Positions 39,640-57,552 are shown, counted from the stretch's first letter. The stretch is 64,000 bases of DNA from Octopus sinensis (GCF_006345805.1 NC_043009.1:2232001-2296000); one strand, 5' to 3'. Notes: generated by a model from the sequence alone, not told the origin. Made by a program: numbers and translations.

Positions 39640-39980
39640 ATAGATGGGACCTCTGTGAAAAGGTTGAGAACCACTACGGTATACAATGAAAAGGAAGGGA
39701 AATATACATAGTATACAAATGTAAAAGATAGGTAGGGTGACCTCTAAGGATAATTGAGGGACCCCACTGTCCAAAATTACCCTGAACACTAAGGGCAAGT
39801 GCCCTCTCCAATTCCTTTTCTCCGACTCACAAGTCTACGCTTAGATAGGTACCATCCACTCTTGCCATTTTCGCAGCTTTCACTCACCTTTCAAGAATAA
39901 TAAAAGATAAGGATGCCTAACAGACACATGTCTATGTTATATAATACGGAGTTTTCTACAGTATATTTCTAACTATAAAT

Positions 39981-42900
39981 ATTCTTTTCTACTAAAAGCA
40001 CAAGGCCTGAAATTTAGAGGAAGTGTTTAGACGATTACATCGACCCCAGTAGGTTACTGGTACTTGATTTATCGACTCCGAAAGGATGAAAGGCAAAGTC
40101 GACCTCGATGGAATTTGAACTCAGAACGTAACGTCAGGCGAAATACCCATTTCTTTACTGCCCACAAGGGGCTAAACATAGAGTGGACAAACAAGGACAG
40201 GCAAACGGATAAGGTCGATTATATCGACTCTAGTACCCAACCGGTACTTAATTTATCGACCCCGAAATTACAAAAGGTAAAATCGACCTCGGCGGAATTT
40301 GAACTCAGAACGTAACGTCAGGCGAAATACCCATTCTTACTGCCCACAAGGGGCTAAACATAGAGTGGACAAACAAGGACAGGCAAACGGATAAGGTCGA
40401 TTATATCGACTCTAGTACCCAACCGGTACTTAATTTATCGACCGCGAAATTACAAAAGGTAAAATCGACCTCGGCGGAATTTGAACTCAGAACGTAACGT
40501 CAGGCGAATACCCATGTCTTTACTGCCCACAAGGGGCTAAACATAGAGTGGACAAACAAGGACAGGCAAACGGATAAGGTCGATTATATCGACTCTAGTA
40601 CCCAACCGGTACTTAATTTATCGACCCCGAAATTACAAAAGGTAAAATCGACCTCGGCGGAATTTGAACTCAGAACGTAACGTCAGGCGAAATACCCATT
40701 TCTTTACTGCCCACAAGGGGCTAAACATAGAGTGGACAAACAAGGACAGGCAAACGGATAAGGTCGATTATATCGACTCTAGTACCCAACCGGTACTTAA
40801 TTTATCGACCCCGAAATTACAAAAGGTAAAATCGACCTCGGCGGAATTTGAACTCAGAACGTAACGTCAGGCGAAATACCCATTTCTTTACTGCCCACAA
40901 GGGGCAAACATAGAGTGGACAAACAAGGACAGGCAAACGGATAAGGTCGATTATATCGACTCTAGTACCCAACCGGTACTTAATTTATCGACCCCGAAAT
41001 TACAAAAGTAAAATCGACCTCGGCGGAATTTGAACTCAGAACGTAACGTCAGGCGAACTACCCATTCTTTACTGCCCACAAGGGGCTAAACATAGAGTGG
41101 ACAAACAAGGACAGGCAAACGGATAAGGTCGATTATATCGACTCTAGTACCCAACTGGTACTTAATTATCGACCCCGAAATTACAAAAGGTAAAATCGAC
41201 CTCGGCGGAATTTGAACTCAGAACGTAACGTCAGGCGAAATACCCATTTCTTTACTGCCCACAAGGGGCTAAACATAGAGTGGACAAACAAGGACAGGCA
41301 AACGGATAAGGTCGATTATATCGACTCTAGTACCCAACCGGTACTTAATTTATCGACCCCGAAATTACAAAAGGTAAAATCGACCTCGATGGAATTTGAA
41401 CTCAGAACGTAACGTCAGGCGAAATACCCATTTCTTTACTGCCCACAAGGGGCTAAACATAGAGTGGACAAACAAGGACAGGCAAACGGATAAGGTCGAT
41501 TATATCGACTCTAGTACCCAACCGGTACTTGATTTATCGACCCCGAAATTACAAAAGGTAAAATCGACCTCGATGGAATTTGAACTCAGAACGTAACGTC
41601 AGGCGAAATACCCATTTCTTTACTGCCCACAAGGGGCTAAACATAGAGTGGACAAACAAGGACAGGCAAACGGATAAGGTCGATTATATTGACTCTAGTA
41701 CCCAACTGGTACTTAATTTATCGACTCCGAAATTACAAAAGGTAAAATCGACCTCGATGGAATTTGAACTCAGAACGTAACGTCAGGCGAAATACCCATT
41801 TCTTTACTGCCCACAAGGGGCTAAACATAGAGTGGACAAACAAGGACAGGCAAACGGATAAGGTCGATTATATCGACTCTAGTACCCAACCGGTACTTAA
41901 TTTATCGACACCGAAATTACAAAAGGTAAAATCGACCTCGGCGGAATTTGAACTCAGAACGTAACGTCAGGCGAAATACCCATTTCTTTACTGCCCACAA
42001 GGGGCTAAACATAGAGTGGACAAACAAGGACAGGCAAACGGATAAGGTCGATTATATCGACTCTAGTACCCAACCGGTACTAATTTATCGACCCCGAAAT
42101 TACAAAAGGTAAAATCGACCTCGATGGAATTTGAACTCAGAACGTAACGTCAGGCGAAATACCCATTTCTTTACTGCCCACAAGGGGCTAACATAGAGTG
42201 GAGGACAAACAAGGACAGGCAAACGGATAAGGTCGATTATATCGACTCTAGTACCCAACCGGTACTTAATTTATCGACCCCGAAATTACAAAAGGTAAAA
42301 TCGACCTCGGCGGAATTGAACTCAGAACGTAACGTCAGGCGAAATACCCATTTCTTTACTGCCCACAAGGGGCTAAACATAGAGTGGACAAACAAGGACA
42401 GGCAACGGATAAGGTCGATTATATCGACTCTAGTACCCAACCGTTACTTAATTTATCGACCCCGAAATTACAAAAGTAAAATCGACCTCGGCGGAATTTG
42501 AACTCAGAACGTAACGTCAGGCGAAATACCCATTTCTTTACTGCCCACAAGGGGCTAAACATAGAGTGGACAAACAAGGACAGGCAACGGATAAGGTCGA
42601 TTATATCGACTCTAGTACCCAACCGGTACTTGATTTATCGACCCCGAAATTACAAAAGGTAAAATCGACCTCGATGGAATTTGAACTCAGAACGTAACGT
42701 CAGGCGAAATACCCATTTCTTTTCTGCCCACAGGGGCTAAACATAGAGTGGACAAACAAGGACAGGCAAACGGATAAGGTCGATTATATCGACTCTAGTA
42801 CCCAACCGGTACTTAATTTATCGACTCCGAAATTACAAAAGGTAAAATCGACCTCGATGGAATTTGAACTCAGAACGTAACGTCAGGCGAAATACCCATT

Positions 42901-54900: not shown

Positions 54901-56702
54901 CTCTAGTACCCACCGGTACTTAATTTATCGACTCCGAAATTACAAAAGGTAAAATCGACGTCGATGGAATTTGAACTCAGAACGTAACGTCAGGCGAAAT
55001 ACCCATTTCTTTACTGCCCACAAGGGGCTAAACATAGAGTGGACAAACAAGGACAGGCAAACGGATAAGGTCGATTATATCGACTCTAGTACCCACCGGT
55101 ACTTAATTTATCGACTCCGAAATTACAAAAGGTAAAATCGACCTCGATGGAATTTGAACTCAGAACGTAACGTCAGGCGAAATACCCATTTCTTTACTGC
55201 CCACAAGGGGCTAAACATAGAGTGGACAAACAAGGACAGGCAAACGGATAAGGTCGATTATATCGACTCTAGTACCCAACCGGTACTTAATTTATCGACT
55301 CCTAAAGGATGAAAGGCAAAGTCGACCTCGGCGGAATTTGAACTCAGAACGTAAACACAGAAGAAATACCTATTTCTTTACTACCCACAAGGGCCTAAAC
55401 ACAGAGAGGACAAACAAGGACAGACAAACGGATTAAGTCGACTATATCGACTCCAGTGCGTAACTGGTACTTATTTAATCGACCCCGAAAGGATGAAAGG
55501 TAAAGTCGACCTCGGCGGAATTTGAACTCAGAACGTAAACACAGAAGAAATACCTATTTCTTTACTACCCACAAGGGGCTAAACACAGAGAGGTTAAACA
55601 AGGACAGACAAACGGATTAAGTCGACTATATCGACTCCAGTGCGTAACTGGTACTTATTTAATCGACCCCGAAAGGATGAAAGGTAAAGTCGACCTCGGC
55701 GGAATTTGAACTCAGAACGTAAACACAGAAGAATACCTATTTCTTTACTACCCACAAGGGGCTAAACACAGAGAGGACAAACAAGGACAGACAAACGGAT
55801 TAAGTCGACTATATCGACTCCAGTGCGTAACTGGTACTTATTTAATCGACCCCGAAAGGATGAAAGGTAAAGTCGACCTCGGCGGAATTTGAACTCAGAA
55901 CGTAAACACAGAAGAAATACCTATTTCTTTACTACCCACAAGGGGCTAAACACAGAGAGGACAAACAAGGACAGACAAACGGATTAAGTCGACTATATCG
56001 ACTCCAGTGCGTAACTGGTACTTATTTAATCGACCCCGAAAGGATGAAAGGTAAAGTCGACCTCGGCGGAATTTGAACTCAGAACGTAAACACAGAAGAA
56101 ATACCTATTTCTTTACTACCCACAAGGGGCTAAACACAGAGAGGACAAACAAGGACAGACAAACGGATTAAGTCGACTATATCGACTCCAGTGCGTAACT
56201 GGTACTTATTTAATCGACCCCGAAAGGATGAAAGGTAAAGTCGACCTCGGCGGAATTTGAACTCAGAACGTAAACACAGAAGAAATACCTATTTCTTTAC
56301 TACCCACAAGGGGCTAAACACAGAGAGGACAAACAAGGACAGACAAACGGATTAAGTCGACTATATCGACTCCAGTGCGTAACTGGTACTTATTTAATCG
56401 ACCCCGAATGGATGAAAGGTAAGTCGACCTCGGCGGAATTTGAACTCAGAACGTAAACACAGAAGAAATACCTATTTCTTTACTACCCACAAGGGGCTAA
56501 ACATAGAGTGGACAACAAGGACAGACAAACGGATTAAGTCGACTATATCGACTCCAGTGCGTACTGGTACTTATTTAATCGACCCCGAAAGGATGAAAGG
56601 TAAAGTCGACCTCGGCGGAATTTGAACTCAGAACGTAACGGCAGACGACATACCGCTAAGCATTTCGCCTGCCGTACCTAACGTTTCTGCCATCTCACCG
56701 CC
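39981..56702 (-). repeat. SINE-derived satellite: ~90 tandem 184-bp units inside one SINE-B envelope
   Basis: 184-bp period (ORF starts 43603, 43787, 43971, 44155...); unit homologous to monomers at 36189 and 59376; head only at about 56640-56702; terminal tail at 39981; block A about 40149-55300 (~82 units) and block B 55372-56640 (7 units). Confidence 0.95.
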
Positions 56703-57552
56703 TTTCTAACTAAATAATGAGACGAAATATCCTTATTTCAGTACGAGATGCATTTAAAATGTGCGGCAGTGTCCGACAGTGATTCACTCTTTCCAACTTT
56801 ATTTTTATTCCTCTTCCATCTGTTCTCTCGACTTAACTTTTCACAAAGGAGAATACGAGGTATATTTCGTGATTAAAACTGTGCTGCTGTAAAGGTAATT
56901 AAAGGGAGACAGCGAGCTATAAAGTCTTAAAATAAAAATCGAGTATTCAGTAATGATATACTTATTGGAATTCACTACACTATCTATCTATTAGTGCATA
57001 AGAACAAAAAATAATTATTCCTAATGTCTAAAGTTTCAAAACAAAATTCATAAAATATCAATTATAATTTATAATATTCTGCAAACATTATTACTTTCCA
57101 GCATATACGTGGTATGAAAAATGCTGGTAGATAAAAGAAGTTAAATATTTGTTTTGGTTAATTTTCAGTCATATATTCAGGGGACAAAGTCGTAAATAAA
57201 ATTAATTATTGGAAATAGATAATATATTCATATATCTGACAGGGTGTATGTGTGTCTATATATATACATCTGCGTATATATGCATACATAGATATAAACA
57301 CACATAGACACACACACACACATATATATTCGGGTAGCATTTAATTATTTCGAAATTAAGAGGATGGCTGCACATTTGGAGAAGGAATGCAGTCCATTAA
57401 GATCAACATTACTACTTCATTATTTTGCTTGGTTAATCGAAGCCCGGAAAGCGAATGTTAACATATATGACCATAAAAAAGAACGTACAGTAAAATCTAT
57501 AAACTATGAACTAGAAAAAAATCTATAATTATGTATATAGCTTCAGCCAGCG

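What the first reader, a model, noticed from the sequence alone, without database searches (positions are those of the whole stretch)
39966..56715. A 16.7-kb satellite grown inside a single SINE insertion, still bounded by a target-site duplication
Seen: about 90 head-to-tail 184-bp units, each the body and tail of the SINE-B monomer found at 36189 and 59376. The tRNA-like head occurs once (about 56640-56702) and a terminal tail once (39981). The flanks read tttctaactataaat (39966-39980) and tttctaactaaat (56703-56715), identical except for a 2-nt indel. The monomer at 36189 has an 18-bp TSD, so this family does make TSDs. Every unit junction joins tail ...aaagaaat to ggtatttc just behind the head. 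Inference: one retrotransposition event, possibly of an already multimeric RNA, seeded the array, giving a direct SINE-to-satellite route with a fixed junction.
Basis: partly seen in the sequence, partly recalled or inferred. Interest (0 to 1): 0.8.

Follow-up and report, generated by a model that had tools for sequence, protein, structure and literature searches.

The report
SINE-derived satellite inside one target-site duplication
A 16.7-kb block of about 90 near-identical 184-bp repeats in an octopus-like genome grew out of two fused short mobile elements (SINEs) that still sit inside one insertion scar, a clean but not unprecedented example of a jumping element turning into satellite DNA.

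Summary
The array is real. TRF finds 40059-56654, period 184, 90.5 copies, 97% match. On the minus strand it reads: 13-nt flank repeat, a single 48-nt head piece, 91 SINE bodies joined by 90 fixed tail-to-head junctions, a terminal tail, then a 15-nt flank repeat. The flank repeats abut both element ends exactly and differ only by a TA indel. About 0.4% of random position pairs match that well.

Two corrections change the reading. The box-B-like half of the head is in every unit. The terminal tail (39981-~40029) is not the SINE-B tail. It belongs to a second subfamily ("A-type"), also seen at 37639-37840 and in Octopus bimaculoides DNA.

So the seed was not one SINE-B monomer. It was a full SINE-B fused, with no spacer, to a 5'-truncated A-type SINE inside one target-site duplication. 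That anatomy fits a template-switch chimera. The array then grew in place by unequal exchange, as shown by a mosaic L-type unit, a hybrid R/L unit, variant gradients and an 8-unit block duplication.

SINE-derived satellites (squamates) and TSD-bounded SINE multimers (a blood clam) are already published, so this is a large, well-preserved new member of a known kind. Genome-wide and empty-site tests could not be run.

The parts
56703..56715 (-). 5' copy of the target-site duplication (minus-strand reading ATTTAGTTAGAAA), abutting the first base of the head
56655..56702 (-). Single-copy 5' part of the SINE head (48 nt, box-A-like TGGCAGAAACG). It is the 5' arm and loop of a strong hairpin whose 3' arm starts unit 1
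56474..56654 (-). Unit 1 (u01): the rest of the head including the box-B-like motif, then body and complete B-type tail. With the 48-nt head piece it forms a full-length SINE-B
55372..56473 (-). Units 2-7, 'R type'. Junction AAAGAAAT-A-GGTATTTCTTCTGTG. The body is almost identical to unit 1. No TTTT run in the sense strand
55188..55371 (-). Unit 8: a hybrid, R-type in its 5' part and L-type in its 3' part, marking a recombination point between the two blocks
40149..55187 (-). Units 9-90, 'L type'. Junction AAAGAAAT-G-GGTATTTCGCCTGACG. About 1.3% substitutions from their consensus. They include sub-variants that form gradients along the array
44005..46935 (-). Two adjacent copies of an 8-unit (~1.47 kb) block: units 54-61 (45477-46935) and units 62-69 (44005-45476), carrying the same private variants in the same order
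   Evidence: lag-8 distances 0,3,0,1,0,0,0,4 against 1-8 at lags 7 and 9
39981..40148 (-). Unit 91, terminal: a 5'-truncated SINE starting at the same GGTATTTC position. Its body is close to the ancestral form. It ends in an A-type tail (~39981-40029, ...TTTCAGGCCTTGTGCTTTTAGTAGAAAAGAAT)
39966..39980 (-). 3' copy of the target-site duplication (minus-strand reading ATTTATAGTTAGAAA), starting right after the last base of the A-type tail
36189..36407 (+). SINE-B monomer used for comparison, flanked by an exact 18-bp TSD (36171-36188 and 36408-36425). It has a 15-nt head deletion whose 3' edge lies at the same GGTA position as the array junction
59376..59605 (+). SINE-B monomer used for comparison. 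Its tail ...GTAAAGAAAT runs into an (AT)29 microsatellite at 59606-59663
37639..37840 (-). A-type SINE copy used for comparison. Same kind of head and body, with the tail ...TTTCGGGCCTTGTGCCTAGAGTAGAAAAGAAT

Best explanation
One LINE-mediated retrotransposition event placed a SINE heterodimer at TTTCTAACTA(TA)AAT. The heterodimer was a full-length SINE-B (head, body, complete B tail ending AAAGAAATA) fused with no spacer to an A-type SINE truncated at about nt 49 of its head (GGTATTTC...).

The fusion is best explained by the reverse transcriptase priming on the A-type RNA, copying it up to the top of the head hairpin, then jumping to the 3' end of a SINE-B RNA and copying that to its 5' end. 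A copy of a dimeric master element made the same way earlier would look identical.

The dimer carried two ~120-nt homologous bodies offset by 184 bp. Out-of-register (unequal) exchange between them made a hybrid unit: junction, 5' body from the A-type element, then 3' body and tail from the B element. Repeated unequal exchange, including multi-unit steps, expanded and homogenised this unit to about 90 copies. The two edge copies stayed nearest the ancestral sequence.

Shown: the anatomy, the two tail types, the flank repeat, the mosaic units and the block duplication. Inferred: the template switch, the exchange mechanism and the order of events.
For: (1) Two tail types. The internal tails and unit 1 are B-type. 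The last tail aligns only with A-type tails: 78% over 64 nt to 37639-37701, and 80-81% over 52-53 nt to two O. bimaculoides copies, with the same 18-column gap relative to B.

(2) Complete ends. The B tail at the junction runs to the end seen in the monomers (AAAGAAATA then TSD at 36407/36408; AAAGAAAT then (AT)n at 59605). The A tail ends AGAAAAGAAT, exactly as at 37639.

(3) One direct repeat pair abuts the outer ends. About 0.4% of random pairs match as well. No copy of it, and no other spacer, lies at any junction.

(4) Mosaic L unit. It has 0/49 differences from unit 91 in nt 2-50, and only 5/65 from unit 1 in the B tail. Shared derived states switch from unit 91 to unit 1 between nt 98 and 111. 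This is what one unequal crossover between the two bodies predicts.

(5) Growth in place. R units sit next to the head. Unit 8 is an R/L hybrid. Sub-variants form gradients. Units 54-61 are duplicated as 62-69.

(6) Precedent. Chimeras of a full-length 5' part directly fused to a 5'-truncated 3' part, flanked by one direct repeat and with jumps at specific template positions, are attributed to LINE RT template switching (PMC2104539). Tail-to-internal junctions are the usual form of non-LTR element tandems, and TE dimers can expand into arrays (PMC5932611).

(7) A second rearrangement at the same spot. The monomer at 36189 lacks 15 nt ending just before GGTA. The spot lies on the 3' side of the loop of a strong head hairpin (-11.7 kcal/mol, z = -4.5).
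Against: No second locus, empty site or unexpanded dimer could be examined, so a one-off local origin is not separated from import of an existing satellite.

The head (nt 1-48) cannot be assigned to subfamily A or B from the few copies available.

The L unit has about 11 private, clustered changes in nt 51-122 (14/60 differences from both edge units in nt 51-110), but none in nt 2-50 and few in the tail. The first 17 nt of the R unit differ from both unit 1 and unit 91 at 5-6 sites. Simple descent from two parents does not explain this uneven divergence, which may mean a third source sequence.

Reverse transcriptase would normally pause at the base of a hairpin rather than near its top.

The TSD copies differ by a 2-nt indel.
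Confidence: 0.5

Rival explanations
1. A resident A-type monomer was invaded by an existing satellite. An ordinary A-type SINE (head, body, A tail) was inserted here with this TSD. A B-derived 184-bp satellite that already existed elsewhere was later brought in by homologous recombination, gene conversion, or integration of a circular multimer into the SINE body.
For: It predicts the same end state: one head, one TSD, an A-type last tail and B-type internal tails. The uneven divergence of the L and R units, which is hard to derive from the two edge copies alone, fits units that evolved elsewhere. In squamates, SINE-derived satellites occupy many loci (PMC10702118).
Against: No other copy of the junction or of the L- or R-private motifs lies outside the array in the 47 kb of flanking window, or (L motifs only) in 34 kb of O. 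bimaculoides DNA. That is very weak power. The model needs a satellite whose own origin still requires a tail-to-nt-49 fusion. Unit 1 and the R units share private states (nt 79, 82, 114) as one continuous block running from the head outwards, which is simplest if unit 1 is the parent of the R units.
Confidence: 0.2
2. Two successive insertions at the same spot (double insertion). A SINE-B and a 5'-truncated A-type SINE landed independently head-to-tail, and unequal exchange then expanded the dimer.
For: Double insertion is the main documented source of TE dimers, and for non-LTR elements it gives tail-to-truncated-5' junctions (PMC5932611). Vassetzky et al. also name insertion into the same locus.
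Against: A double insertion should leave a copy of the target site between the elements. Here the junction holds at most one extra base (A or G), and the only direct repeat brackets the whole composite. The second hit would have had to be exact to the base and make no duplication of its own.
Confidence: 0.12
3. One reading: a single SINE-B monomer whose body and tail were duplicated internally at the DNA level, with no second element involved.
For: One head, one TSD and a fixed junction. Arrays of the form TSD1-(SINE)n-TSD1 exist in a bivalve (PMC11481361). The last five bases of the tail (GAAAT) match the 5' arm of the head hairpin, which offers a microhomology.
Against: The terminal tail is A-type, not B-type. 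A duplication inside one element cannot place a complete B tail internally and leave a different tail next to the TSD. The bivalve cases also have truncated internal tails, unlike this array.
Confidence: 0.04
4. The array length or content is partly an assembly artefact: mis-sized or mis-joined long-read consensus across near-identical repeats. This does not exclude the other explanations.
For: There are 85 single-base indel columns among the 82 L units, mostly in homopolymer runs. That is typical of unpolished long-read consensus. The exact 8-unit block repeat could in principle be a mis-assembly.
Against: Substitution variants are ordered in gradients and blocks, with distinct edge units, a hybrid unit and unique flanks on both sides. 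That is not what a collapsed or randomly inflated consensus looks like. The TSD links the two flanks independently of array length.
Confidence: 0.1

Closest known systems
SINE-derived satellites (sSats) of squamate reptiles (Vassetzky, Kosushkin & Ryskov 2023, Mob DNA 14:21; PMC10702118)
   Same: Tandem repeats made from part of a SINE, with a longer terminal unit reaching the SINE terminus at one end or, rarely, both. Unit lengths fall in the 150-180 bp class and arrays reach up to ~1000 units. Long arrays are more homogeneous. Unequal homologous recombination or repeat insertion at one locus is proposed as the first step.
   Different: That work covers squamates only, and the authors say it is uncertain whether such satellites exist elsewhere. 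It does not mention TSDs or junctions at a complete 3' end (0 occurrences of 'TSD' or 'target site'). Here both SINE termini and the TSD are preserved, the two termini belong to different subfamilies, and the host is an octopod. The number of loci and the chromosomal position are unknown here.
TSD1-(SINE)n-TSD1 multimers in the blood clam Scapharca broughtonii (Mob DNA 2024, 15:22; PMC11481361)
   Same: A mollusc host. Tandem SINE units inside one TSD pair. The first unit has a complete tRNA-related head, internal units share one head truncation, and the last unit has the same truncation and a complete tail. Some arrays mix SINE families.
   Different: Those arrays have 4-15 units, and their first and internal units have truncated 3' tails. 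Here there are ~90 units (16.7 kb) and every internal unit keeps the complete B tail. That points to an RNA-end junction rather than an internal DNA duplication.
TE dimers as seeds of satellites (McGurk & Barbash 2018, Genome Res 28:714; PMC5932611)
   Same: A two-step route: a tandem dimer forms first and is then expanded by unequal exchange. Non-LTR tandems typically join an intact 3' end to a 5'-truncated neighbour. One dimer (hobo) expanded to ~16 copies.
   Different: Their dimers carry a copy of the target site inside the junction, the signature of double insertion. This junction has none.
Chimeric retroelements made by LINE RT template switching (Buzdin/Gogvadze; PMC2104539)
   Same: A complete copy of one RNA fused directly to a 5'-truncated copy of another, flanked by one short direct repeat, with switching at specific template positions.
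   Different: Those are single chimeras of unrelated RNAs that did not expand. Here both partners are related SINEs, so the chimera carried its own direct repeat and could grow into an array. Template switching here is inferred, not shown.

Membership tests
SINE-derived satellite (sSat sensu Vassetzky et al. 2023) | Tandem repeat unit derived from a portion of a known interspersed SINE | tested here: met
   Every one of the 91 units gives a BLAST hit to the monomers at 36189 and 59376. Consensus units differ from monomer 59376 at 31-37 of 183 positions, i.e. 80-83% identity.
SINE-derived satellite (sSat sensu Vassetzky et al. 2023) | A terminal unit extended to the SINE terminus | tested here: met
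   Both ends are extended: the head piece at 56655-56702 and the complete tail ending at 39981.
SINE-derived satellite (sSat sensu Vassetzky et al. 2023) | Satellite-like behaviour: multiple loci, preference for subtelomeric regions | not testable with these tools
   The source genome is not in any searchable collection. Junction scans of metagenome and prokaryote collections gave only chance hits.
TSD1-(SINE)n-TSD1 multimer (bivalve type) | One TSD pair around the whole multimer and none between units | tested here: met
TSD1-(SINE)n-TSD1 multimer (bivalve type) | First unit with a complete head; internal and last units sharing one head truncation; last unit with a complete tail | tested here: met
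TSD1-(SINE)n-TSD1 multimer (bivalve type) | First and internal units truncated in the 3' tail | tested here: not met
   Internal tails end AAAGAAAT(A), the same end as in the free monomers.
Double-insertion TE dimer | A copy of the target site inside the tandem junction | tested here: not met
   The junction holds 0-1 extra base, and no flank sequence occurs at any of the 90 junctions.
Template-switch chimeric retroelement | A full-length 5' module fused directly to a 5'-truncated 3' module from a different transcript, with one flanking direct repeat | tested here: met
   B-type and A-type tails, direct fusion, outer repeat. This fits the anatomy only. The RT jump itself is not observable.
tRNA-derived SINE | A head recognisable as tRNA-like (cloverleaf, A and B boxes) | tested here: inconclusive
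   Box-like motifs TGGCAGAA and GAGTTCAAATTCC are seen by eye. ARAGORN finds no tRNA in the window. Rfam gives no tRNA match at E<=1 on the two copies in 36000-40400.
tRNA-derived SINE | Interspersed copies with TSDs | tested here: met
   Exact 18-bp TSD at 36171-36188 and 36408-36425. Dispersed copies occur in the window and in O. bimaculoides.
tRNA-derived SINE | 3' tail shared with a partner LINE | not tested
   No LINE with either tail was found in the window by BLAST of the tails. No genome was available to search.

The most novel reading that the evidence does not exclude
The tail-to-nt-49 junction is not a one-off. It would be the product of a position-specific template jump at the top of the head hairpin, so this SINE family regularly makes head-truncated multimers. 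Because the head-proximal R units lack Pol III terminators (no T4 run in units 1-8), the single head could drive multi-unit transcripts that retrotranspose and seed new arrays elsewhere. That would be a self-propagating SINE-to-satellite pathway in octopods. The same breakpoint in the deletion of the monomer at 36189 would be a second trace of this jump site.
Probability: 0.12. Interest if true: 0.7.

Novelty: new member of a known kind. Interest (0 to 1): 0.42.

Why it matters
How interspersed elements turn into satellite DNA is usually reconstructed after the founding structure has been erased. Here the founder can still be read: both SINE ends, the insertion scar, the two parental tails, and a repeat unit whose mosaic records the first crossover. 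That makes the locus a good teaching and test case for the route from dimer to unequal exchange to array. It would also extend SINE-derived satellites from squamates and short bivalve multimers to cephalopods. If the junction recurs across the genome, it would point to a defined template-jump site as a regular source of satellite seeds. Otherwise this is an ordinary, if unusually well-preserved, by-product of mobile-element activity with no indicated function.

Tried and rejected
(1) I scanned metagenome contigs and genome contigs for the junction GTAAAGAAATNGGTATTTC. That gave 120+ and 93 single hits, all in bacterial or metagenomic contigs. BLAST of the SINE against the fetched loci found nothing.

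(2) The 25-nt core had no match in viral contigs. A sequence-string search of the paper library found nothing.

(3) Exact-protein look-ups of two window ORFs found nothing on record. Homologue searches with a Penelope-like ORF, a mariner ORF and P0008 gave one usable octopus locus (L214, O. bimaculoides) and nothing from the window's own species. As a result, no subfamily consensus, no second array and no empty site could be obtained.

(4) I looked for a paralogous empty site among repeats in the window. The immediate flanks are unique.

(5) I looked for a source of the private mid-segment of the L unit or the private 5' segment of the R unit outside the array. None was found.

(6) tRNA calls with ARAGORN and Rfam were negative.

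(7) I rejected the idea that a junction palindrome drives DNA slippage. The junction hairpins are weak (-3.0 and -3.6 kcal/mol).

(8) I rejected a 90-mer RNA as the inserted molecule. L units carry two T4 runs each, and 16.7 kb is far beyond the length of Pol III products (established knowledge).

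
Full report
**1. What is in the sequence**

Tandem Repeats Finder reports one large array at 40059-56654: period 184, 90.5 copies, 97% matches and 1% indels. The element runs on the minus strand.

Read in that orientation the locus is:
- ATTTAGTTAGAAA (56715-56703);
- a 48-nt head piece, GGCGGTGAGATGGCAGAAACGTTAGGTACGGCAGGCGAAATGCTTAGC (56702-56655);
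- 91 copies of a body that starts GGTAT(T/G)TC and contains the box-B-like GAGTTCAAATTCC, spaced 180-188 nt apart;
- ATTTATAGTTAGAAA (39980-39966).

Ninety junctions join ...GTAAAGAAAT, one base (A or G, rarely T), and GGTATTTC. The pattern occurs 83 times at <=2 mismatches against 0.13 expected, all inside the array. The other seven differ by 1-nt indels. The box-A-like motif occurs once in the array region.

The flank repeats differ only by a TA indel and abut the first base of the head and the last base of the terminal tail. With +/-2 nt of slop allowed at both ends, 84 of 19,843 random position pairs from the rest of this microsatellite-rich window match as well.

**2. Two corrections**

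First, only the first 48 nt of the head are single-copy. The box-B half is part of every unit, so the junction lies inside the head region. ARAGORN and Rfam do not recognise the head as a tRNA. "tRNA-like" rests on box-like motifs seen by eye.

Second, and more important, the terminal tail is not the tail carried by the units.
- Units and free monomers end ...CTTAATCC(C/G)TTT.TCTGTCCTTGTTTGTCC.CTCTATGTTTAGCCCCTTGTGGGCAGTAAAGAAAT. I call this B-type.
- The last unit ends ...CGTCTAAACACTTCCTCTAAATTTCAGGCCTTGTGCTTTTAGTAGAAAAGAAT.
- That sequence aligns with the tail of a different SINE copy in the window (37639-37701, 78% over 64 nt) and shares an 18-column gap relative to B.
- It also aligns with two SINE copies in 34 kb of Octopus bimaculoides chromosome DNA (80-81% over 52-53 nt).
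- BLAST aligns it to the SINE-B monomers only over its first 25-28 nt, which are shared body.
- Both tails are complete to the ends seen in free copies.

This A-type tail is thus an established family tail, not a decayed B tail.

The window itself is from an octopod-like genome. The only named homologue of a window ORF is from O. bimaculoides, and related SINEs occur in that genome. The species is not identified.

**3. Internal anatomy**

Aligning all units gives five classes:
- unit 1, continuous with the head;
- six "R" units (2-7), whose body is nearly identical to unit 1 (1/60 and 3/65 differences in the mid and tail segments) but whose first 17 nt carry 4-5 private changes;
- unit 8, an R/L hybrid;
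- 82 "L" units (9-90), with 1.3% substitutions from their consensus;
- unit 91, the terminal copy.

The L consensus is a mosaic. It is identical to unit 91 over nt 2-50 (0/49) and shares further derived states with it up to nt 98. From nt 111 on it shares derived states and the whole B tail with unit 1 (5/65 differences).

The L block contains ordered sub-variants. CCGCCGAGG occurs near both ends and CCATCGAGG in the centre.

There is also an 8-unit block duplication: units 54-61 and 62-69 differ at 0, 3, 0, 1, 0, 0, 0 and 4 sites, against 1-8 at neighbouring lags.

Eighty-five single-base indel columns, mostly in homopolymers, look like long-read consensus errors.

**4. How it most likely arose**

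The outer repeat says that one integration event delivered something with a SINE 5' end and an A-type 3' end. The internal complete B tails say that a second SINE RNA end is built into the structure. The founder that fits both is a heterodimer: a full SINE-B followed directly by an A-type SINE truncated at nt ~49.

This is the anatomy of chimeric retroelements attributed to template switching by LINE reverse transcriptase. Those have a complete 5' module, a 5'-truncated 3' module, direct fusion, one flanking repeat, and switching at specific template positions (PMC2104539). Tail-to-internal junctions are also the usual form of non-LTR tandems, and TE dimers are documented seeds of arrays (PMC5932611).

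The dimer's two bodies form a 184-bp-offset direct repeat. One unequal crossover between them yields exactly the L-type mosaic: junction and 5' body from the downstream element, 3' body and B tail from the upstream one. The hybrid unit 8, the variant gradients, the near-ancestral edge units and the 8-unit duplication are the expected traces of continued unequal exchange in place.

The jump site lies on the 3' side of the loop of the strongest hairpin in the head (-11.7 kcal/mol, z = -4.5). The monomer at 36189 has an independent 15-nt deletion that ends at the same GGTA. This hints that the position is a preferred breakpoint.

I put about 0.5 on this full scenario. Confidence is higher for its parts:
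- B+A composite: about 0.9;
- genuine TSD: about 0.85;
- in-place growth by unequal exchange: about 0.85.

**5. What does not fit, and the rivals**

Divergence along the unit is uneven. The L unit has about 11 private, clustered substitutions in nt 51-122 but none in nt 2-50. The first 17 nt of the R unit match neither edge copy. No source for these segments lies in the window or in the octopus locus.

This leaves room for the main rival (0.2). In it, an ordinary A-type monomer with this TSD was later invaded, through homologous recombination or a circular intermediate, by a B-derived satellite that evolved elsewhere. That gives the same end state. It can be separated from the best explanation only by genome-wide data or by orthologous alleles.

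Two independent insertions (0.12) are disfavoured. A double insertion should leave a target-site copy at the junction, and none is there.

An assembly error in array length (0.1, not exclusive) cannot be excluded without reads. The ordered variants and unique flanks argue that the structure is real.

**6. Comparison with what is known**

SINE-derived satellites were described in 56 squamate genomes. Their units come from part of a SINE, terminal units extend to a SINE terminus, and long arrays are homogenised. The authors were unsure whether the phenomenon exists outside squamates (PMC10702118).

In the blood clam Scapharca broughtonii, tandem SINE arrays of 4-15 units include a TSD1-(SINE)n-TSD1 class with a complete first head, a shared internal head truncation and a complete last tail. 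Some arrays mix SINE families (PMC11481361).

The present locus has those defining features and differs in four respects:
- scale (~90 units, 16.7 kb);
- host (an octopod);
- retention of complete internal tails;
- a legible two-subfamily founder.

My literature searches found no report of a cephalopod SINE-derived satellite. The library is incomplete, so this is weak evidence of absence.

**7. Verdict**

This is a real, well-preserved SINE-derived satellite bounded by one target-site duplication.

- Novelty: new member of a known kind.
- Interest: moderate (0.42).
- The value lies in the intact founder structure and in a testable idea that a specific template-jump site feeds satellite birth.
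- No function is indicated.

Noticed in passing
window 36189-36407 (head, about 36223): The SINE-B monomer lacks 15 nt of the head (GGCGAAATGC.TAGC, the 5' arm and loop of the head hairpin). The 3' edge of this deletion lies just before GGTA, the same position (+/-2 nt) at which every array unit begins. This may be a recurrent breakpoint or template-jump site.
   Followed up: partly
window 55372-56654 versus 40149-55187: In the sense (minus) strand, units 1-8 contain no TTTT run, while each L-type unit checked (units 9-12 and 89-90) has two, at about nt 50 and 57. A Pol III transcript starting at the single head could in principle read through ~1.5 kb of units before reaching a terminator.
   Followed up: partly
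window 40149-55187: The L-type unit carries about 11 private substitutions clustered in nt 51-122 (for example TTCATCC to TTTGTAA, and CCAGTTACGCACTGG to CCGGTTGGGTACTAG). It has none in nt 2-50 relative to the terminal unit. No source sequence was found, so this remains unexplained.
   Followed up: partly
window 14952-16150 (+): A remnant of a Penelope-like retroelement: a reverse-transcriptase-like ORF (14952-15452) followed in another frame by an ORF whose relatives carry a GIY-YIG domain (PF01541) or PF26215. The nearest named relative is an O. bimaculoides 'myb-like protein D'.
   Followed up: partly
window 30495-30806 (+): A C-terminal fragment of a mariner-type transposase. Its relatives carry PF01359.
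   Followed up: partly
window 39381-39587; also 5311-5518, 29095-29300, 20791-20978, 31624-31830; L214 3593-3773: Another interspersed repeat family of about 200 bp, with at least five copies in the window (67-88% identity) and one in O. bimaculoides. One copy lies 400 bp from the array but does not touch the TSD.
   Followed up: no
window 59606-59663: The SINE-B monomer at 59376 ends directly in an (AT)29 microsatellite, so the SINE tail also seeds simple repeats. The whole window is very rich in di- and tetranucleotide repeats (101 TRF rows).
   Followed up: no
window 40059-56654: There are many single-base indels between otherwise identical units, mostly in homopolymer runs (85 indel columns in 82 units). 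This looks like unpolished long-read consensus error, so unit lengths of 180-188 nt may really be a uniform 184.
   Followed up: partly
window 21185-21304 (+): An old, diverged fragment of the same SINE superfamily (nhmmer E = 2e-11).
   Followed up: no
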